Positions 6,483 to 41,496 of a DNA stretch of 64,000 bases are shown here, one piece after another (the first letter of the stretch is position 1; every line of letters starts with the position of its first letter). A model generated the notes under the pieces. It made no database searches, had not been told where the DNA came from, and saw only the letters and a program-made list of their open reading frames with translations. Source of the DNA: Chlorokybus atmophyticus (lineage: Eukaryota; Plantae; Mesostigma and Chlorokybus algae); contig RHPI01003244.1 in NCBI GenBank assembly GCA_009103225.1, positions 186,001 through 250,000 of the forward strand. Direction: 5' to 3'. The position numbers and the translations under genes are program-made.

Positions 6483-6708
6483 NNNNNNNNNNNNNNNNNN
6501 NNNNNNNNNNNNNNNNNNNNNNNNNNNNNNNNNNNNNNNNNNNNNNNNNNNNNNNNNNNNNNNNNNNNNNNNNNNNNNNNNNNNNNNNNNNNNNNNNNNN
6601 NNNNNNNNNNNNNNNNNNNNNNNNNNNNNNNNNNNNNNNNNNNNNNNNNNNNNNNNNNNNNNNNNNNNNNNNNNNNNNNNNNNNNNNNNNNNNNNNNNNN
6701 NNNNNNNN
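6483..6708. other. Assembly gap (N run) flanked by G homopolymers
   Basis: N bases in the sequence. Confidence 1.
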
Positions 6709-26029: not shown

Positions 26030-29000
26030 ATGGATGGCTTCTACCCGCAGCGGCGGCGGCGGCCGCCGCAGGCACAAGAGAAGGTCTTGGGGGAGAGCCA
26101 AGGGGTGAGTAAGCGTCTGCGGGCTGCTGCTTCGCCGAGCAGGGAGGTTCCGGACGGCGAGGATGAGGACGCGAACTTTGTCCAGGACCGCCCTGTGGTC
26201 GTTGTGGACAGCGAGGAAGACGTGGGTGGAGCTGATGATGATGACGACCTTCGATTCATGATTGTTGACGTCGTGGTGGAAAACGGAGGACGCACTCCGT
26301 TGGTATGACTCATGCACTAAGCACCGAATATGAGTACTTCGCGAACTGCGAAGACAATGCAAATACAACAATGAGGCATGTTCCAATCTTAACACAGGCG
26401 TTACCTCGAGTCTGTTTGTGTACAATAACGGTCGCTTTTGAGCACGTTCATGCACGCACCTGTGAAGGGCATTGGGGTTAAACTTGGGAGCAATGCCAGA
26501 CAACCAAGAGTAAGCTAAACCGTTGTAGCGTTGCGCGTCTTTTGTTACGTGCTAGGTTACGAGGGAAAGGGNNNNNNNNNNNNNNNNNNNNNNNNNNNNN
26601 NNNNNNNNNNNNNNCCCCCCAAATGAAAACAACCAATGAAAACAAAAGTACCAAAACAATACAAACACACCACTACCAACCAACATGCTCACCAGTCACC
26701 AGCATGCACTGAGTTGTAGACGCGCATGAACGCACACATGCAACTTCTTGACAACAATCTGGGTTCATTACAACTTGCTGTAGATACTGCTCTATGGATT
26801 GAAGGCGGACGGACACAGCGTGTGCTGTCACGTAACAGGTGCAGAAGCAAACTGCTTACTTTAGTGTGGCAACCCATCACCTTGCACTGATGTGCCTTCG
26901 TTGTTGCAGATTTCCGCCCTTACTTCTGGTTCCCTGCGCCAGTACTTGGCAGTAATGGCAGCTCGAGAGCGTGTAACCAGGTAACCACTATTTCTGTCCT
27001 TGCTCAAAGTAGTTACAATGAGCTTTCGTACCTTCCTCGTACACATGCTCTGTGCAGGATGACTTGCGAGGACTCAAAGCAGAGCTTTGCAAAGGCTTGC
27101 AACGCAGAAACCCAACACTCACCGGTGAGGCGGTAAGTGTTCTGTAGTAAGTAATGTCGGTCAGGAGGCAGGCGATATGCCTTACTTTGCCTTTGAAATG
27201 GTGTTCATTGCTTGCAGGTGGCCGGCATATCATTGCACCAGAAGCAGCCCATCATGTACTATCGTCCCGATGGAGCGTCATCTTTTGTTAAGGTACGGTA
27301 CAGACCGCAACGCAGCTCATATCAAATCACTGGCATATGCCAATATGTATGGCTGTACTGCAGGTGGAGCTCTATCGTCATGAAGAAGTGAATGGCGCAG
27401 TTCGAGAAATGCTAGAGTTGGCTGGCACGAATGCATTGAAAGCCACAGATGGACTCAGCTGGCCCTTTACGCCACAGGTTGCAATGCTTAACACTTGCGC
27501 ACGCTCCTTGTGGCTTTCTCCACAACGTGCTCGTTGAATTGTTGGGAATGTTTATGGCACCTGTCCACCAGGCTTATGAGGAAGACATAGGCATCGCGCA
27601 GCGGTTTCTTTGTGACGCCAAGCTCGCAGGAGGCGCATGGCTAAGAATACCATCGCAGTCAGTCGAACCGGTGGCAAATAACGCCAGGCTCTCCCGTTGC
27701 AAGATGGAAGTCAGTCCTGCAGCTGCGTGTCTCATCAATAGCAACATAGTTTGGAGTATGATTCTCCCGTCTTAAAGATTGCATCCGTTTGGCTGGCATG
27801 CAGGTGTCGGCAAACTGGCAGGCGATTGTACCGTTGACGCCCGATGCCACCTGGCAGCTGGAAGGTCCTCTTCCCACCCCACCAGCTGCACAACAGGCTT
27901 CTTCCAAAGATGGGTCAAAGGGTGGTAGTAGGTCTGATGCCCGTGCACCAGGCAGCAAAGAGTGGCTTACAGTGCCGCCGCTGAAGATACTCACGTTGCA
28001 TGTTGAGGTAAGAACTTTGACTTGTTGGATAGCACCCTTAAGTCCCTCCTGCTTGTATTGCCTTTGGCTGTGTTCAAACACCTTCAAAGGCAATCAGCAA
28101 GTCTGGCATGACGCCGTCATCTCAAGTCGATCCTGTCGCAATGATCACGTGCCGGCTGTCGCGCAAAGGCAGCAGCGTTCAGGAGCAGGAACGACCTCAA
28201 ATAACTACTTTCACAACCAGCATTCAGCGCTCTCCTCCAGGTACGGTGTCTTTTGTAGGCCATGCTGCGACACTTGAATGCAAGCTTCTTCTTTAATTTG
28301 CTTTTGCATGTCTGCTGGATGAAGGAGGTTGCGACTGTTGATATTAACGCAAGTGTCACAATCGCAGGTGTCACAGTGCGCATGTTTGACGGGGAGGCCG
28401 TCATGTTGTCGGTGTGGCAGAAATGGCTCGCGGACGAGATTGACCCAGATGTGATATGCGTGTTCGACATCAAGCACAGCTTGCGTTATCTGTCTGATCG
28501 GTATAAGGTACAGTTGCGCTTGAGCGATTACCTTCACACAATACAAGCCGAGGGTTGTCACGGATACAGCTGCAAGTTGAACTCAACTTGCTAGGCAGCG
28601 CGGTTGGGAGTACTCGATCTTGGGCGCAGACTTAACCAAGACTTGAAAGTGAAATCTGTCGTATCGTATAACAAGAATTGGGTGCGCAGCCAGTCACGCA
28701 TGAGCTCAACATCTAACCAGGAAGTCTTTCGGGTGAGTGTCAGGCCGATCGTGCGCGTTGCTTGCCAAGTGCTCAGCATGCATCTGTTTATGGATGTCTG
28801 AAGATATCAGTCCTTTGCAGGCTGATGTTGAAGGAAGGCTGGTGTTGGACGTTCTGCGGCCTGTTCTGGTTGGCCACACCTTGTCTGCATTTACTCTGCC
28901 GGAATGCTCCGCCGTGTTCCTGAAGAAGCCTCTGGAAGTACTCAACTCGCAAGCTTTGTGCGCCCTCTGGAATGGTAAGGAGTCAAACAGTTCCATATTG

Positions 29001-32000
29001 TCTTGTGTAAACATCGTAGCCCATCACCCCTTACTTTTTGCAGGTCAAGTACAGGGCCCTCCGGATGGCATGAGCGGCCCTGAGCGTATAGCTAATTATG
29101 GGTTAAAGCGGGTAGAAACTGTCTTTGCACTGCTTGAGCACCTGCAGGTACGCTGCGTGCATACCACTTAGTAGCTGCAGTGCTTGAGGCTTTGTCATGT
29201 GCTGAAAGTGTCTCTGCAGGTAATTGCAGAGACATTAGAAATGGCACGCGTGACTGGAATAACCCTTCCTGAAGTGCAGTACAAAGCACAGATGCATAGA
29301 GTAAGCACACTTATGTAATTTTACTCATCACTTTCCCCTATCACGCTTGTGTAGGTCGCTGAACATTCACACAACGTCTTACAGGTGTTCTCGTTGCTGC
29401 TGCGCGCAGCAAGTCGTGATGGTTTGATAATTGGACAAGACAGGGTGGAGGGCACTTTGAGCGAGTCGCCCTTTCTCTTGCACCCTATTAAAAACAATAA
29501 TGCTGGTCTTCATGAGGACCCCGTGGCGATTCTCGACTTCGCCTCACTCTACCCTTCCTTGTACATGGCGCACAACCTGTGTTACACAACCCTCGTGCAC
29601 GCCGCCGACGCGCCTAACTTGACTGCGGAGAACGTCTTTACGACCCCGACGGGCGCCAAGTTTGTCAAGAATAATGTCATCAAAGGGGTCCTTCCCCGCA
29701 TCTGCAAAGCCCTGATATCTGCGAGGGCCGAAGCGCGTGCCCTCCTGGCTGTAGCAACAAGGCAAGCCCAATGCTGACAGGTTGATTTTAGTATGAGACA
29801 TGCTTTTTGGTCTGGTGACCTGGTCGTGTTGCACAACAGCCCGATAGAGCGTGCAGTGTTGGATGGGCGGCAGAAGGCGCTGAAGCTGTGCGCCAACGCA
29901 TTGTACGGGTACACGGGAGCTGGCGCTTCACGCCTGCAGGCTGTGCCTATCGCTGACTCGTGCCTGGCTCTAGGTTCACAGGTAAATCCCATACTCACAA
30001 AACACTATCAGTGGTTAGTATAGAGCGTCATAACAGCGTACAAGTACATTGTCATACGGTTCTGTTGTCAAGGTCACATTCATGGTCAAGCCGCAGTCAA
30101 TCGTAGCTGCAACCAGTTGCCTGGGCTCAGCTGAGCGTCTCGGTCGGAATGCCGATGCTTGCATTGAATCGTAGCATGGCTAAGTGCATCACAATGCTAG
30201 TGGCGAATATTGCTGCACATGGACGCGCCAAGGATTCTGCAAGCACTTCACAGCAGTTTACAGTGCCTCATGTTGATGCATCACGTACTGACCTGCTGAT
30301 TGAACGTTAAGCCATGCCAACAGTCTTGCCAGAAAGCCATGGCGGTTGTGGAGGCCACCCTGCCTTCAGCCAAGGTGATCTACTGTCAGACGGACAGCGT
30401 GTTCGTGCGTTTTGCTGGCGCTTCCGTGCAGGACGCTATCAGACTTGGCCATGAGGCCGCCAAAGCCGCAACAGCCCAGTTTCCGCAACCCATCAGCCTC
30501 AAGTTTGAACGTGTCATGCATCCGTTCCTCCTGCTCCAGGTCAACAGGTACACCTGAGTATTACTTCATTGGACATTGTTGGTGCCGCATGCGCACTGAG
30601 CTGCAAGCGAGCAAGCATTTGCCTGTATGGGAATATGCACCGCTGGTAGTAGCAACTCGGATGTTCGTACACTTGCAGACAAGTTAATGCTTCGGTTGTA
30701 AACCCACGGAGGCATTGATGCTTGATGTGTGTTGTTTGCTAATTGCCTTGGTGAGCATGCAACCGGAGATTGAATGTTCTGTTGCTGGTAGCCCGCTGCT
30801 TGTTTATATTCTGGAATTGCGCATGCTATTCACAGCGAGTGTCCAGCACAACTCAGTAGCTTTGCTCTGGCTTCCAAAGGTATGCTGGAGTGGGCTACAC
30901 ATCTGAGAGCGACACAAAAGGTAACCTTGTGGTCAAGGGCCTGGAGAGTGAGCGCCGTGACGTGCCCCCGCTTCTACGAACAACTGCTGCAGAGGTGTGT
31001 TTTTCGTGCTTTGCCCCATTCAGCGCACAACAACGCCGAGCGCAGTTATCTGGAATGCGGCATGCGGGCTTGCAGCGCCTCATGTAGGATGGATTGATGT
31101 TGCTCAGGTATTGAAAAGGATCCTGGTGGAGAGGGACGTAGAAGGGGCATTGGCAGCAGCTCAGCGATCGATATCTCTGCTGTTATCGGGTTCCGTGTCG
31201 CTGTTTGACGTGTTGATGACAGAGGGGCTGTGGCGGGTCGATGGAGATGACATTAAGCGTGCAGCGGGCTTACTGCCCGCTGCTCCAAGGTGTGTCCCCT
31301 TTTCATAATCGTGCATAGTAACACATAACAGCAACACGTTGTCGCAACACTTCACGAGCAGGAGTGACACTACGGTGGCTTCCATAGAGGAGCTTCGAGG
31401 CCCACATGCTGCTCTTGCCGTCCGGTTGCAAAAGCGCGATCCCAGTCGAGCTTTTCACATAGGTAACAGGCGCTACAAAGCTACTGCTGTTTCTGTAGCA
31501 GGTAAAGTGTGTTACTCATAACTTGTCCATTACAGGAGAGCGCATTCCATACGCGCTGCTGAGTGGAAGGGGCACCAAGCAGGACGACATGGCCGAGGAC
31601 CCGATGCGCGCTCTTGAGGAAGGGTCATGGCCCAACTATTACGTCTACTGGGAGAACAAGATGCGCCGGCCGCTGGAGAACCTGTTTGAGCATGTTCTCA
31701 GCAAGGCCCAGACAAAGGAACTCTTTGCGGGGACTCACACGCGGCAGAGACCCACGCAAAATCCCAACTTCCAACTTGAGGAGGAGGAGAGGAAAGAAGG
31801 AACGGGCAGTGCTAGGAAAGGCCAGCTGTCGGGGTACTTCAAGCCCAAACCCACTTGTGTGTGCTGCCGCCAGCCGCTGGCTTCCCATAAGGGACCCGGA
31901 CCTGCGCCTGTCCTCTGCTCCAACTGCAGGTGTGACTCACAACAACTGCCGTGACAACTTGCTTTGTGCCTGGTGTGCTTGTGGGTCAGCTACCTGCGCC

Positions 32001-32352
32001 GTTCATGAAAACCAGTATAGTTGTCCTTCAACATTGAGGGAAGAATCCTTGCACCACCTGAATGCTGTGGCATGCCAGGCTAGTTATGACACATATGTAT
32101 GATGGGCACTGCAGGGAAGGCGATGCTGTGCAGCGTTTAACTCTTCAGCAGCTGTCGCTTCAGCAGCAGCACGAGGTGGAGCTGTCAGTTGCGTTATCGC
32201 AATGCGCGCGGTGCCACTCCGGCGGCTTGATGGGCACCGTTCTCTGCACAAACTGGGTGTGCCCAGCGCTCTACATGCGCACAGAGGGATCTCGCCACGC
32301 CCGCGCGCATGCTGCCACACTCGACCAGCTGGGGCGTGCTGACTGCATATAG
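26030..32352 (+). CDS. Divergent DNA polymerase delta catalytic-subunit-like B-family polymerase with degenerate 3'-5' exonuclease; multi-exon
   Basis: [29 protein letters not shown] (Pol delta N-terminal domain); [15 protein letters not shown]; motif [22 protein letters not shown] (29535); motif [18 protein letters not shown]; motif [12 protein letters not shown] (30381); [10 protein letters not shown]; GERIPY; CysA CVCC...LCSNC (31856 onward); CysB QCARCH...CTNWVCP; stop at 32352. Intron 1 contains an N gap. Confidence 0.92.
26572..26614. other. Assembly gap (N run) inside polymerase intron 1
   Basis: N bases flanked by G and C runs. Confidence 1.
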
Positions 32353-37401: not shown

Positions 37402-40400
37402 ATGGGACAGAACGTTGATACTGGGACGCCGACGCCGCCTGCCACCCCGCCCACTCCCAGGTTTGACTTGATACGCACGGTGAACCAATGCTAACCTAAG
37501 CAAGCGTAACATGCTGGCCGAGAGGGTGACATGCTGCCTAGGCTGTGTATAAACTTCTGAAAGGTGACTGAGCTTGTGGTATCAACGTACACTGTTCTCG
37601 CCGTGAGCTCTTGGCCTGCGCTGCTCGTGGTGGCCACCTCTCTCAATTGCAACGCAAGGGCACAAATTACCTAACACTGAAAACGCTAGAGCTAAGACTG
37701 CTCACGCAACAAATTTTAGAAGCAACAACACGAGTCACTGAGTGTGGCACGCGCAATTGTTGTCACTTGCGACATGGTAATGCTGCTGACAGTCTCTCTT
37801 TCGCACGTACACATGTCAAGGCTCAAGGGAAACTGACTAATGCAAGCCAGCCAGCCAGGGGGCTGGCGTTCTGCGTGCTTGTGCGCTTGAAGCATGCATA
37901 TTCAACCACTATTTGTGTGCGCACATGCGCACGTAGTATGTGTGCGTGCACACAACTGTTAATCCCAAGCTGCCATGTTTTCAGCCCTACAACACGAGCA
38001 AAGCTGGAAGGGTGTTCGCGGCTGATCAGCAACGGCATCTACCGCTCCCCGTACACCCACTGGTGGGAAGTCGCGGTACGCACTCCTACTCTCACTGCTT
38101 CTCCCCAACACAGTCGTCACCCTTTGGTACTAGCAGTGGAGTAGTAGCTCTTACAGCCAGCATGCATGCACGCAGGCCTCCCCGCGCCACCCGGGATCAG
38201 GGTTAGTGACATCACCGCCACGGGCGCTGTCGTCGTTGTCATCGTCCACGCCGGTGACACCGGCCTCGACGCCAGCAGCTACACCACCGCGCAGGGTGGC
38301 TTGGCCAGAAGAGGCGCCGACAGTTGTGTTGTTGCCTCTAAAACCAAAAACAACCACAACAGCGTGTTATGATCTCCGTGACGACCAGAGCAGAACACAA
38401 CAGCAAAACTCTGTTGAGGGCCAGGATGGCGATGGCCTGGCCAACGTTGACAAGATTGCCGGTAAGCCAGCATTGCTTCTTTGCAAGTGCATGTTCAATC
38501 AGCTGCTCTGTGTGTGACGCAAAAGAGTGTGTGCAGAGCGAAAGAAGAGAATGGAGGCTTTTCGTCAGCGCCGCGCACAGGTGCTTGCTATCCACGACAC
38601 TGCCAGTCGAGGCACCGGTGGCGATGATGATACTGTTGTACCGGAGGTCGTCACGCATCATGTTGAGAGGGCAACCGCCTCCACCCCTGGAAGCAATGTC
38701 ACAATGGATGCAGCGGAGACCCCCGACGAGCAGAGAATAGCGGGTAGAGATCTGAGGATTCAATCGTGTAATAATAAAGCTGATGCTGTGCATGCGGCAA
38801 TTGTTTCGTGGCACACGCATGACTGGGTGTTGTTTTTTCCAGACCGAAGGCGGCGCTTGGAGCAGGTTCGGCTGCGCCGTGAGCAGCTCCTCCTTCTTGC
38901 GTCTGAGAGAGCATCACGCAATGTCGATGTGTTGCAAGAGGCCTCCTCAGCAGAGACGGGTTCGTTGCAAGAGCATACAGAAACAGCTCTCCCGTACACA
39001 GAAGGAAGCTTACATGGACGCGAAAACAGTGGTGTGCATGCAATGGGTCTTGAAGAAGGCTATCATGGGCAGCGTGTTGAGATTGAGCGGCAGTGGGGCG
39101 ATGCACTGCAGCAGCACCTGTCTTCTTTGGACACATCATCTGAACTTGATGCTGTGATGTTGGCACGGGGAGTTAACGCACAGGAGCAGCTGGAGGCATC
39201 GCCTTCTGGCAAACAAGACTGGCGAGATGGTGATGGGAGGATTGTGGATGCGCAGCAACAGCACTCGTCAATGATGCGCGAACAACACGATGAGGACACG
39301 CACGCAACGTCACTTGTTTGGAGCAAAGCTACAGCTTCAAGGAGGCAGTTTGACCCTGGGGACGTTACTTGGGACACTCAGGCTGTGCCCAGCAACCCCG
39401 GTAATACGTGCACACCTTATCATCCCCTTGCTTGCTTGCCAACTTCAGCAGCCTCACCTATGCTGTTATGACACTGCAGGTCCGCGTGCTCGAGCCGGCC
39501 ACGCATCCGCTTCGTGGGGCGAGAACCTCCTCATCACTGGCGGGGCCGGCTTGTCTCTATTCAGCACGTGGCAGCTGGACGCATGCACGTTAAGCTGGCG
39601 GAAGCGTCGAGCTGAGGGTGACGTGGACCCCGCTGCCACTAACACCGCCGCCTCCGCATACACCTCGGCTACATATGTCCCGGGCAACGCAGCGGCCGAG
39701 CTTGAGGCCTGCGTCATGCTTTTTGGCGGCTGGCGGGAACCTGATGGTGGTGGTGGTGGTGGTAATGTTGGTGTTGCAGTCAGTGCGGACCTCTATGTGC
39801 TTGAGGGCCTGAACGACAGTCCCGACACGCCCCTTACCTGGAGCAAGATACCACACGAGGGTGAGTCTCGGTGGGGTGCGGGTACCGCACACAGAAATGT
39901 TGGGTTTTGCAACCGACAAGCCTGTCTCACACTTGCTCACAGGTAGGGACAAGTGGCCGCAGGCTCGTGCCATGCATGCAGCGGAGCTCCTGAATGACCG
40001 CATCCTTGTGGTTGGCGGCTGGACAGGTGAGCGTGACACGGCAACAGAGGCCTTGGCTGAGATTGGCATGCGCTGTACCTTGTGTACCAAAAAGTCTACG
40101 TGATTGTTTTGTGTACGCAGGTGGTGGGGCAGCCAGACGCGACTTCTTATCAGACGTGTGGCAACTTGATGTTGTCACTCTGCAATGTGAGTGCCTCTTT
40201 TGTTCTCCCAACAAGGTGCGAGTCAGTTGGTCCTGTGTGCAACGAAGTGTTGCATGCACAGGGGAGCGCGTGGAATTAAAGGGCGTGAACTTGCCAGTGG
40301 GTCGCGCCGGCCACACCGCCACACATGTGCACGAGACAGGCCAGGTGTACATACTTGGCGGCCACAACGAGCTCGGTCCCGTCGCCATCGTGGGCGTATT

Positions 40401-41496
40401 CGACCCCGCCACACGCCACTGGATAGAGCAACCATCCACCATGTTCGGCCCATGCGCTCGCTCCGGTCACGCCGCCATCGCATGCAGAGGCACCATCCTC
40501 ATCCACGGCGGCTGCGACGCCGTTGGCAACGTGCTGTCGGACATGTGGATATTGCATACAACATCGCTCACGTTGTCGCGGGTGGAGATTGAACAAAACC
40601 ACCCGAGGTCCGGACACAGCGCAATCCTGATCGGCGGGCACCGTGTTGTTATTGTCGGTGGGCTGGTTGACGCACACCGCGGCGTGTGCGCTGCTGGCAA
40701 TGATGTGGTAGTGTGTCTACGCACACACCGGCCGTGCGTAAAGCAACTCAGGGTGATTGGAGGGCCTCTACACTCCACTGTGAGGGCCGCAAGCTATGCA
40801 TTGACAAAGCATGAGTCGCCACAACTGCGGTTTCAGTGGTACCGCCAACGAAATGGTGAGTGACGAACGCATGCAACCAAACGTGGTTGTGTTGATGCGG
40901 ACCGTGTGTTGGTGCCTTCAGGATGCCCATGTGAAGTCGTAGCGGGTGCAACCTTGGCAGGATATTTGCCCACCGCGGACGACATCGGCTGCTTGCTCGG
41001 TGTGTCTTGCCGTGCTGGCGACAGCTCCTTCTTCGCGCGCAGCGACGACGTTGTCCAGCTCGACCCGCACGTCGCCAGCATCATAAACGACTGGTTGGCC
41101 CGCGGGTATGCCGAGTTCTCTATAGATGTGTCCGTGACTCAACGACAGCAACACCAAGAACACAAAGACAAAGCTCTCTCTTCTTCCTTGCGTGCTGCCA
41201 CACTGCGGCTGTTCATGGACCGCGTGAAGCTGAAGCTATGTGGCGCGGGAGGAGGAGGGGCCACAGCGTACAACGGTGCGTGGAGGCCCGGCTTTGTGGT
41301 GTCATTGCTGCATAAAGGTGATCAAGGTGCGACATTTGAAGTTAGGTTTGATGTGCGAGGGCCAGTTGTGCATGCCGTTGTGCTCGATGCAGCACAGCGG
41401 GACCTGCTTGCGCTTGCGTGTCGGGCCTTCTGGGCTGCGGCGATGGCACGGCCACAAAGCGTGCCGTATACGCGGGTGTTGGCCATGCAAGTGTAA
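37402..41496 (+). CDS. Kelch-repeat beta-propeller protein with low-complexity/coiled N-terminus and unassigned C-terminal domain
   Basis: Kelch motifs PRARAGHAS...LLITGG, PQARAMHAA...ILVVGG...FLSDVW, PVGRAGHTA...VYILGG, PCARSGHAA...ILIHGG...LSDMW, PRSGHSA...VVIVGG. Phase-consistent 5' exons from ATG 37402; stop at 41496. Confidence 0.82.

What the first reader, a model, noticed from the sequence alone, without database searches (positions are those of the whole stretch)
26030..32352. Pol delta paralogue with dead proofreading, QTD motif C and intact Fe-S/Zn C-terminal motifs
Seen: ExoI SFDIE becomes TLHVE (His at 27999), ExoII GYN...FDLPYL becomes [12 protein letters not shown] (about 28455-28490), and ExoIII YCLKD becomes YGLKR (29097-29111), so catalytic carboxylates are lost in all three motifs. 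Polymerase residues remain: motif A Asp (29535), motif B Lys/Tyr, and the second Asp of motif C (YCQTDS). CysA and CysB, which bind the B subunit in Pol delta/zeta, are kept. Established: the second DTD Asp is the essential one, and Pol zeta is likewise an exonuclease-dead delta relative. Inference: this is neither canonical POLD1 nor REV3 (no REV3-type long insert, delta-like N-terminal domain) but a likely active, error-prone polymerase that could use POLD2/POLD3. A divergent delta-like clade has, from memory, been noted in PolB surveys, but no function is known to me.
Basis: partly seen in the sequence, partly recalled or inferred. Interest (0 to 1): 0.75.

Follow-up and report, generated by a model that had tools for sequence, protein, structure and literature searches.

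The report
Fifth green-lineage B-family DNA polymerase
This Chlorokybus gene is expressed and encodes a relative of the replicative DNA polymerase delta with no working proofreading site and an altered catalytic motif; it belongs to an old, uncharacterised polymerase family found from green algae to ferns but not found in seed plants, most likely used for DNA damage tolerance or repair.

Summary
Spliced transcript contigs from two studies give a 22-exon, 1181-aa gene (26030-32352, +). The assembly gap lies inside intron 1 and does not touch the coding sequence.

Proofreading carboxylates are lost in Exo I, II and III. Motif C reads YCQTDS. Motif A, motif B and all eight CysA/CysB cysteines are kept.

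These are not private decay. They mark a monophyletic family (100/100 support) found in Chlorokybus, Klebsormidium, Closterium, moss, a lycophyte, ferns and many chlorophytes. No seed plant appeared among the hits.

Across 36 members the polymerase catalytic residues are invariant. The first motif-C Asp is always Gln or His, and KKRY is always VNRY. Twenty-six of 34 members carry a canonical PCNA-binding box just before CysA.

The family lies outside crown Pol delta (99/99, green algae included) and outside animal REV3 (100/100). Its deeper position is unresolved.

Bryopsis has both this gene and a canonical Pol delta. Moss is annotated with other POLD1 genes and a separate Pol zeta. The probable moss orthologue is induced by bleomycin and gamma rays.

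I could not retrieve Chlorokybus's own canonical POLD1 or REV3. Catalytic activity and partners are inferred, not shown.

The parts
26030..32352 (+). Whole CDS: 22 exons, 1181 aa, delta-like B-family polymerase of the QTD family
   Evidence: Spliced transcript contigs from two studies. Model built. 99% identical to JGI model Chlat1/5669 (P0001).
26303..26783 (+). Intron 1 (GT..AG), which contains the assembly gap 26572-26614
   Evidence: Joint 26301->26783 in both contigs. Exon 2 encodes the expected N-terminal-domain strand.
27858..27965 (+). Disordered linker between the N-terminal domain and the exonuclease domain (aa 286-321)
   Evidence: pLDDT below 50 at residues 290-316. Linker is 7-101 aa in the family against a fixed 9 aa in Pol delta.
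27990..28007 (+). Exo I remnant LTLHVE: human D316 becomes His333, Glu335 kept
   Evidence: Alignment to human POLD1. In the family the Glu is lost in 35 of 36 members; the target instead lost the Asp.
28008..28089 (+). Intron 8 (82 nt), spliced in contig X1 and retained in contig X2
   Evidence: Depth and piece coordinates; GT..AG ends.
28442..28492 (+). Exo II remnant [17 protein letters not shown]: human D402 becomes Ser, with a one-residue deletion
29097..29111 (+). Exo III remnant YGLKR: human D515 becomes Arg552
   Evidence: Arg in 28 of 36 family members.
29535..29594 (+). Motif [21 protein letters not shown], with catalytic Asp642
   Evidence: D, F, S, L, Y, P and S are invariant in 36 of 36. 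Aligns to human D602.
29762..29839 (+). GC-AG intron; the public JGI model mis-splices here and loses 11 aa of the fingers
   Evidence: Joint 29759->29838 with 2-nt ambiguity. P0001 lacks these residues.
29868..29918 (+). Motif [18 protein letters not shown] (Lys732, Asn736, Tyr739)
   Evidence: K, N, Y and G invariant in 36 of 36; NS becomes NA throughout the family.
30381..30398 (+). Motif C, YCQTDS: first Asp becomes Gln786, second Asp788 kept
   Evidence: Q in 29 and H in 7 of 36; the second D in 36 of 36.
30528..30889 (+). [10 protein letters not shown] in place of the KKRY primer-contact motif (split by intron 30548-30879)
   Evidence: V in 33 and N in 35 of 36 family members; KK in 16 of 16 Pol delta.
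31817..31840 (+). PCNA-box-like KGQLSGYF, five residues before CysA
   Evidence: Canonical Qxx[LMIV]xx[FY][FY] at this place in 26 of 34 family members and 0 of 16 Pol delta. The target is degenerate, with Lys in place of Gln.
31856..31927 (+). CysA, CxxC...CxxC zinc motif
   Evidence: Cysteines conserved in at least 90% of A1 rows. Pfam zf-C4pol hit.
32203..32262 (+). CysB, CxxC-x10-C-x4-C, the Fe-S-type motif

Best explanation
The gene encodes the Chlorokybus member of an ancient family of Pol delta/zeta-type B-family catalytic subunits, inherited vertically across the green lineage (here called the QTD clade). It is distinct from canonical POLD1 and from REV3.

**Shown.**
- The gene is expressed and correctly spliced.
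- The proofreading site is destroyed.
- The polymerase catalytic set is kept: motif A Asp, fingers Arg/Lys/Asn/Tyr, and the second motif-C Asp.
- The first motif-C Asp is Gln, and the KK of the KKRY primer-contact motif is Val-Asn.
- A PCNA-box-like motif, the CysA zinc motif and the CysB Fe-S-type motif are kept.

**Inferred.**
- It is an active, non-proofreading polymerase.
- It docks through its C-terminal domain on the POLD2/POLD3 module and on PCNA, as Pol delta and Pol zeta do.
- With weakened checking of the primer terminus, it serves in DNA damage tolerance or repair synthesis, for example by extending mismatched or lesion-paired termini.
- It does not carry out bulk replication.
For: **Expression and gene model.** Spliced contigs from two studies (model).

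**A real family.** It is monophyletic at 100/100, and its internal topology follows the species tree, with streptophytes and chlorophytes apart. Members come from Chlorokybus, Klebsormidium, Closterium, Physcomitrium, Diphasiastrum, ferns and many chlorophytes.

**Distinct from Pol delta.**
- The Pol delta clade is 99/99 and includes green algae.
- A clade of the family plus green-algal Pol delta is rejected, p-AU 0.012.
- Bryopsis has both P0318 (family) and P0343 (canonical).

**Constraint on catalysis.**
- D642, R705, K732, N736, Y739 and D788 are invariant in 36 of 36.
- Positions at least 90% conserved, family against Pol delta: 121 v 175 of 490 in the polymerase domain, but only 32 v 77 of 234 in the exonuclease domain.

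**Partner motifs.** The cysteines are conserved in at least 90% of rows. A canonical PCNA box occurs in 26 of 34 family members and 0 of 16 Pol delta.

**Fold.** AlphaFold2 pLDDT 85. Best matches are Pol delta at TM 0.82-0.89, ahead of Pol zeta at 0.64.

**Precedent.** Archaeal PolB2/Dpo2 lacks proofreading and has the first Asp of YGDTDS substituted. It was once called inactive and is now shown to be an efficient translesion extender (PMC7390963, PMC8764526).

**Damage link.** Moss member P0416 maps to a 15.99-Mb chromosome at 12.66 Mb. This fits Pp3c17_18800, which is 5x induced by bleomycin (PMC4990234) and sits in the SOG1-dependent gamma-ray cluster (PMC8711748).
Against: - No biochemical or genetic data exist for any member.
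- The first motif-C Asp and the KK of KKRY are near-universal in active B-family enzymes, so activity could be low or absent.
- Chlorokybus's own PCNA box is degenerate, with Lys instead of Gln.
- The Klebsormidium and Diphasiastrum models lack some CysB cysteines.
No sequence match to the Pp3c identifier was made.
- Canonical POLD1 and REV3 of Chlorokybus were not retrieved.
- Deep placement is unresolved: family+REV3 gets 64/24, and a family+delta tree is equally good (p-AU 0.56).
Confidence: 0.6

Rival explanations
1. It is the green-lineage orthologue of REV3: a short Pol zeta that never gained, or later lost, the long insert.
For: - The exonuclease site is dead, as in REV3.
- The ML tree joins the family with animal REV3, weakly (64/24).
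- The family has a variable insertion of 7-101 aa exactly where REV3 carries its large insert, between the N-terminal and exonuclease domains, against a fixed 9 aa in Pol delta.
Against: - It scores 403 bits to human POLD1 against 174 to yeast Rev3, and its fold is closest to Pol delta.
- REV3 keeps YGDTDS, KKRY and DFQSLYPS; this family does not.
- A family+delta tree is slightly better (p-AU 0.56).
- Moss is annotated with a separate Pol zeta, Pp3c2_33440 (PMC4990234, PMC8711748).
- Arabidopsis has REV3, yet no seed-plant member of this family appeared in a search with the fern protein.
- The REV7-binding-like string in the linker is not conserved.
Confidence: 0.1
2. It is a catalytically dead pseudo-polymerase kept as a scaffold or competitor for PCNA and the POLD2/POLD3 module, like the inactive C-terminal half of Pol epsilon.
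For: - The first motif-C Asp, the KK of KKRY and an invariant Arg after motif B (GR becomes GA) are all replaced.
- The C-terminal domain and PCNA box are kept, and the PCNA box is stronger than in Pol delta.
Against: - All direct catalytic and dNTP-binding residues are invariant in 36 sequences spanning the chlorophyte-streptophyte split: D642, Y647, R705, K732, N736, Y739, D788.
- The polymerase domain is much better conserved than the exonuclease domain.
- Dpo2, with the same first-Asp loss, is active (PMC8764526).
Confidence: 0.2
3. It is Chlorokybus's only Pol delta catalytic subunit, so the alga replicates without Pol delta proofreading.
For: I could not retrieve a second POLD1 from this genome with the tools left.
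Against: - The family coexists with a canonical Pol delta in Bryopsis and with two further POLD1 genes in moss (PMC8711748).
- It lies outside the 99/99 Pol delta clade.
- Canonical POLD1 is universal in eukaryotes (established knowledge).
Confidence: 0.03
4. It is a decaying, lineage-specific duplicate on its way to becoming a pseudogene.
For: Many conserved Pol delta residues are lost. One transcript contig retains an intron that would shift the frame.
Against: - The 1181-codon frame is intact across 22 exons and is properly spliced in X1.
- Orthologues with the same substitutions occur across the green lineage, with catalytic motifs invariant.
Confidence: 0.02

Closest known systems
DNA polymerase delta catalytic subunit (POLD1 / Pol3)
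   Same: - Same domain order and fold: N-terminal domain, exonuclease fold, palm, fingers, thumb, and a C-terminal domain with CysA and CysB.
- Best sequence match (403 bits to human POLD1) and best structural match (TM 0.82-0.89).
- Motif A is almost identical.
- About 1100-1200 aa, with no long insert.
   Different: - Exo I, II and III carboxylates are lost.
- YGDTDS becomes Y[ACGS][QH]TDS, and KKRY becomes VNRY.
- NS becomes NA in motif B, and the GR after motif B becomes GA.
- Most members have a canonical PCNA box instead of Pol delta's degenerate one.
- The linker between the N-terminal and exonuclease domains varies in length.
- It lies outside the 99/99 Pol delta clade, at only 27-36% identity.
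DNA polymerase zeta catalytic subunit (REV3 / REV3L)
   Same: - A Pol delta relative with dead proofreading.
- It shares the CysA/CysB C-terminal domain, which in yeast binds Pol31/Pol32 (PMC3526297).
- It carries an insertion at the junction of the N-terminal and exonuclease domains.
- It has a damage-tolerance role; that role is inferred here.
   Different: - REV3 has a very large insert with REV7-binding motifs and keeps YGDTDS and KKRY.
- This family has neither feature.
- It scores lower to Rev3 (174 bits; TM 0.64).
- It lies outside the animal REV3 clade.
- It coexists with an annotated Pol zeta gene in moss.
Archaeal PolB2 / Dpo2
   Same: A B-family enzyme without proofreading and with the first Asp of YGDTDS substituted. 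It was long predicted inactive, but it is damage-inducible and an efficient extender of mismatched and lesion-paired termini (PMC7390963, PMC8764526). It is the best functional analogue.
   Different: Dpo2 is archaeal, about 555 aa, and lacks the exonuclease fold and the eukaryotic C-terminal domain altogether. It has no specific phylogenetic link to this family; the resemblance is convergent.

Membership tests
Canonical Pol delta catalytic subunit (POLD1) | B-family fold with N-terminal, exonuclease, palm, fingers and thumb domains plus a CysA/CysB C-terminal domain | tested here: met
   Pfam DNA_pol_B_exo1, DNA_pol_B and zf-C4pol. AlphaFold2 pLDDT 85. Foldseek top hits are Pol delta. All eight cysteines present.
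Canonical Pol delta catalytic subunit (POLD1) | Active 3'-5' exonuclease site (human D316, E318, D402, D515) | tested here: not met
   D316 becomes H, D402 becomes S, D515 becomes R. The loss is family-wide.
Canonical Pol delta catalytic subunit (POLD1) | Motif C YGDTDS and the KKRY primer-contact motif | tested here: not met
   The target has YCQTDS and VNRY. All canonical Pol delta sequences examined have DTD and KKRY.
Canonical Pol delta catalytic subunit (POLD1) | Branches inside the eukaryotic Pol delta clade | tested here: not met
   The Pol delta clade (99/99) excludes it. A clade with green-algal Pol delta is rejected, p-AU 0.012.
REV3 / Pol zeta catalytic subunit | Inactive exonuclease domain in a delta-like polymerase with a CysA/CysB C-terminal domain | tested here: met
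REV3 / Pol zeta catalytic subunit | Large insertion between the N-terminal and exonuclease domains, carrying REV7-binding motif(s) | tested here: not met
   The target has only a 42-aa disordered linker. A single motif-like string, LEGPLPTPP, is not conserved in the family.
REV3 / Pol zeta catalytic subunit | Branches inside the REV3 clade | tested here: inconclusive
   It lies outside the 100/100 animal REV3 clade. A sister relation gets only 64/24, and a family+delta tree is equally likely. No plant or algal REV3 could be fetched.
Green-lineage QTD clade (defined here) | Y[ACGS][QH]TDS, [HQ]VNRY and NAxYG; the Exo II Asn and Asp lost (most members Q and T/S, the target D and S), with a one-residue deletion; Exo III Asp lost; CysA/CysB kept | tested here: met
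   The target carries all of them. Its only peculiarity is Exo I: D becomes H with the Glu kept, whereas 35 of 36 members lose the Glu. It branches at the base of the streptophyte part of the clade.
Archaeal PolB2/Dpo2-type extender | Efficient mismatch and lesion extension with poor insertion, and no exonuclease activity | not testable with these tools
   It shares the sequence hallmarks (no proofreading, first motif-C Asp substituted). The activity needs biochemistry.

The most novel reading that the evidence does not exclude
Green algae and non-seed land plants have a fifth class of nuclear B-family DNA polymerase catalytic subunit. It is as old as the green lineage or older. It forms a third holoenzyme on the shared POLD2/POLD3-PCNA platform, beside Pol delta and Pol zeta, and acts as a damage-induced, non-proofreading extender or repair polymerase. 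Seed plants have lost it.
Probability: 0.35. Interest if true: 0.85.

Novelty: new variant of a known kind. Interest (0 to 1): 0.7.

Why it matters
Textbooks and recent surveys list four eukaryotic B-family polymerases: alpha, delta, epsilon and zeta (PMC7544198; PMC6794406 for Arabidopsis). A conserved fifth catalytic subunit would change that list for a major eukaryotic lineage. It appears throughout green algae, mosses, lycophytes and ferns, and databases label it 'Pol delta catalytic subunit'.

It would also add a third competitor for the Pol31/Pol32-type accessory module.

It offers a natural test of what the first motif-C aspartate and the KKRY lysines do.

It bears on why seed plants could lose it.

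It can be tested directly in Physcomitrium, by gene targeting, and in green algae. Existing moss data already hint at induction by DNA damage.

On a practical level, the name 'POLD1' on these genes misleads annotation and expression studies.

Tried and rejected
- **Chlorokybus POLD1 and REV3.** I tried to find them through the scan's notes. Word and sequence look-ups were blank. No tool route was left after the capped searches.
- **REV3 search.** A search seeded with a nematode REV3 (P0114) listed only animal sequences. No plant or algal REV3 entered the tree.
- **Protein Atlas look-alikes.** These gave only generic 'DNA polymerase' clusters.
- **Wrong frame.** It was corrected.
- **Moss isoform.** The look-up of encoding contigs for isoform P0314 was not on record. 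The longest isoform, P0416, worked.
- **REV7-binding motif.** I looked for one in the linker. A single match in the target is not conserved, so I dropped it.
- **Prior descriptions.** Literature searches found none of the family. The only trace is a moss table listing 'POLD subunit 1a/1b/1c'.
- **Rejected readings:**
  - A hidden exon in the assembly gap. The gap is intronic.
  - Pseudogene.
  - Giant-virus-derived PolB. The gene has the cellular delta/zeta-type C-terminal domain, and it did not group with any divergent sequence in the first tree.
Full report
**1. Gene model and the assembly gap**

The region has no long open frame, so the gene is split by many introns. Two public runs from different studies (X1 of 2021, X2 of 2013) hold about half of the sampled words of the locus.

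Laid on the window, each run gives one long contig (3768 and 3761 nt) at 100% identity that skips short GT..AG segments. These contigs are spliced mRNA. The run type is only a guess in the record. The removal of 20 or 21 introns is what shows that these are transcripts.

From the 15 listed joints, the contig coordinates and the depth bins, I derived all 21 introns. The CDS runs 26030-32352 on the + strand, with 22 exons and 3546 nt. It encodes 1181 aa and has a single terminal stop.

The N gap (26572-26614) lies inside intron 1 (26303-26783). Exon 2 (26784-26838) supplies the Pol delta-like strand [18 protein letters not shown] that joins exon 1 to [11 protein letters not shown]. The 582 nt of the X1 contig upstream of 27362 match the summed exon lengths back to about 25995. 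Nothing coding is therefore hidden in the gap.

- Intron 8 (28008-28089, 82 nt) is spliced in X1 and retained in X2.
- Intron 15 (29762-29839) is GC-AG.
- The public model of this gene is P0001, named jgi/Chlat1/5669, which identifies the organism as Chlorokybus. It is 99% identical to my model but lacks 11 residues at the GC-AG intron.
- The transcript-supported version aligns better to human POLD1 in the fingers.

**2. The observation**

Aligned to human POLD1:

| Site | Human residue | Target |
|---|---|---|
| Exo I | D316 | His333 |
| Exo I | E318 | Glu335, kept |
| Exo II | D402 | Ser, with a one-residue deletion |
| Exo III | D515 | Arg552 |
| Motif A | D602 | Asp642, kept |
| Motif C | G754, D755 | Cys, Gln |
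| Motif C | D757 | Asp788, kept |
| KKRY | K-K | V-N |

- The fingers Arg705 and the motif B residues Lys732, Asn736 and Tyr739 are kept.
- CysA (CxxC...CxxC) and CysB (CxxC-x10-C-x4-C) are complete.
- Pfam finds DNA_pol_B_exo1, DNA_pol_B and zf-C4pol.
- The Pfam scores are about half those of canonical Pol delta.

**3. It is a family, not a private oddity**

- A full-database HMMER search with exon 15 returned the gene itself and then a set of full-length proteins. These are 38-43% identical over their whole length; canonical Pol delta is only 27-30% identical.
- All of them share the same changes: dead Exo motifs, Y[ACGS][QH]TDS, [HQ]VNRY, and both cysteine motifs kept.
- Word-based searches with the Chlorokybus and fern proteins, plus cluster look-ups, named the following:
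  - Streptophyte algae: Klebsormidium and Closterium.
  - Non-seed land plants: Physcomitrium, Diphasiastrum, Adiantum and Ceratopteris.
  - Chlorophytes: Bryopsis, Coccomyxa, Myrmecia, Trebouxia, Symbiochloris, Chlorella, Auxenochlorella, Micractinium, Scenedesmus, Tetradesmus, Monoraphidium, Volvox, Dunaliella and Haematococcus.
- No seed plant appeared among the 120 best hits of the fern query, and no organism outside the green lineage among the named family members. After the family, that list runs straight into canonical Pol delta.
- This absence is limited by the sensitivity of a word-based search.

**4. Phylogeny**

I aligned the exonuclease-plus-polymerase core (699 columns). The set held 26 family members, 19 canonical Pol delta, 12 animal REV3 and 4 archaeal PolB as outgroup. 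The canonical Pol delta sequences included Chlamydomonas eustigma, Bryopsis, Galdieria, Naegleria, fungi and animals.

IQ-TREE under LG+C20+F+G4 (PMSF) gave:

| Group | Support (bootstrap / SH-aLRT) |
|---|---|
| Family | 100/100 |
| Pol delta | 99/99 |
| REV3 | 100/100 |

- Inside the family, Chlorokybus, then Klebsormidium, then moss, lycophyte and ferns stand apart from the chlorophytes, as in the species tree. This argues for vertical descent from the common ancestor of green plants.
- The ML tree joins the family to REV3 only weakly (64/24).
- A tree joining the family to Pol delta is 1.2 log-likelihood units better (p-AU 0.56).
- A tree joining the family to the green-algal Pol delta is rejected (27.96 units worse, p-AU 0.012).

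The family is therefore neither inside crown Pol delta nor inside animal REV3, and it does not look like a recent green-lineage copy of POLD1. Long-branch effects on its 1.2-unit stem cannot be excluded. No plant REV3 or streptophyte POLD1 was available.

**5. Coexistence with POLD1 and REV3**

- Bryopsis sp. KO-2023 has a family member (BSKO_03972) and a canonical Pol delta (BSKO_05402: YGDTDS, KKRY, YCLKD) on different large contigs.
- For moss, a published table lists POLD subunit 1a (Pp3c6_19160), 1b (Pp3c17_18800) and 1c (Pp3c27_3350), plus a separate Pol zeta subunit 1 (Pp3c2_33440) (PMC8711748).
- Arabidopsis is described with only alpha, delta, epsilon and zeta, and its REV3 has a REV7-binding motif (PMC6794406).
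- Chlorokybus's own POLD1 and REV3 were not retrieved. This is the main gap in the case.

**6. Constraint pattern**

Across 36 family members:
- **Invariant:** motif A (DFxSLYPS), Arg705, Lys732, Asn736, Tyr739-Gly, and Tyr784/Thr787/Asp788/Ser789 of motif C.
- **First motif-C Asp:** Gln in 29 and His in 7.
- **Family-specific fixed residues:** Ala737, Ser747, Cys758-Leu759, Asp756 (34 of 36) and Asn838.

Positions at least 90% conserved, family against Pol delta:

| Domain | Family | Pol delta | Positions |
|---|---|---|---|
| Polymerase | 121 | 175 | 490 |
| Exonuclease | 32 | 77 | 234 |

- Selection has therefore kept the polymerase centre and released the proofreading domain. A scaffold-only protein should not keep every catalytic ligand.
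- The family evolves faster than Pol delta. Bryopsis v Scenedesmus is 51% identical in the family; Bryopsis v Chlamydomonas eustigma is 73% identical in Pol delta.

**7. Partner motifs**

- The eight CysA/CysB cysteines are conserved in at least 90% of the 42 aligned rows.
- Five residues before CysA, 26 of 34 family members have a canonical PCNA box, Qxx[LMIV]xx[FY][FY]. None of 16 Pol delta sequences does.
- Chlorokybus has the degenerate KGQLSGYF.
- In yeast, the same type of C-terminal domain binds Pol31/Pol32 in both Pol delta and Pol zeta (PMC3526297).
- Use of the POLD2/POLD3 module by this family is an inference.

**8. Structure**

- AlphaFold2 on the family alignment gave pLDDT 85 and pTM 0.85.
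- Disorder is confined to residues 1-71, the linker 290-316, and 1037-1059 just before the PCNA box.
- Foldseek ranks human and yeast Pol delta first (TM by target 0.82-0.89, 26-29% identity). Yeast Pol zeta follows at 0.64.
- The linker between the N-terminal and exonuclease domains is 7-101 aa in the family and exactly 9 aa in Pol delta. REV3 carries its large insert at this same site (PMC6895278).

**9. Function**

No member has been studied. Two leads exist.

First, archaeal PolB2/Dpo2 shares the two hallmarks: no proofreading, and the first Asp of YGDTDS substituted. It was predicted inactive, yet it is damage-inducible and efficiently extends mismatched and lesion-paired primer ends (PMC7390963, PMC8764526).

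Second, there is the moss member P0416 (XP_024401114; YAQTDS, QVNRYAG).
- It lies at 12.66 Mb on the 15.99-Mb record CM009332.2.
The size ranking and the accession numbering are from my memory, not from a tool.
- Only one moss cluster of the family was found, so the other two annotated POLD1 genes are probably canonical.
- Pp3c17_18800 is listed as 5x induced by bleomycin (PMC4990234). It also sits in the gamma-ray cluster that depends on SOG1a/b (PMC8711748).
- I put this mapping at about 75%.

Together with the loss of the KK pair of KKRY, these leads favour a damage-tolerance or repair polymerase. From memory, those lysines contact the primer-terminal minor groove in other B-family enzymes.

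**10. Novelty**

Databases name these proteins 'DNA polymerase delta catalytic subunit' or 'hypothetical protein'. The PolB survey I read lists four eukaryotic classes and no such clade (PMC7544198). Six other literature searches found no description. I rate it a new variant of a known kind: a distinct, conserved branch of the delta/zeta group.

Noticed in passing
window 29762-29839: A GC-AG intron. The public JGI gene model (Chlat1/5669, P0001) uses other splice sites here and lacks 11 residues of the fingers that the transcript contigs support.
   Followed up: yes
window 28008-28089: The 82-nt intron 8 is retained in the 2013 transcript contig (X2) and removed in the 2021 one (X1). Retention would shift the frame just after Exo I.
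   Followed up: partly
P0091 (1881 aa, eukprot gene3232-4076_t), residues 21-189: One family member is modelled as a fusion with an N-terminal Exo_endo_phos (AP-endonuclease-type) nuclease domain. This could hint at a repair role, or it could be two neighbouring genes merged by the annotator.
   Followed up: no
P0151 (Klebsormidium) and P0154 (Diphasiastrum), CysB region: The Klebsormidium model lacks three of the four CysB cysteines, and the lycophyte model lacks one. This is either real loss of the Fe-S site or errors in the gene models.
   Followed up: no
window 39290-40860 (+): Long open frames with Kelch-repeat Pfam hits (Kelch_4, Kelch_1, KLHDC2-type), so a Kelch-repeat gene lies about 7 kb downstream of the polymerase.
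   Followed up: no
window 29988-30280: A low-depth 293-nt contig in X1 lies wholly inside the 342-nt intron 16. It is probably pre-mRNA or genomic carry-over.
   Followed up: no
window 6483-6708: A second assembly gap, of 226 N, far from the gene.
   Followed up: no
L001 (Physcomitrium CM009332.2: 12656119-12669479): The moss orthologue spans about 9.4 kb and has at least six annotated isoforms, some of which lack the C-terminal Cys motifs (P0314 ends before CysA).
   Followed up: no
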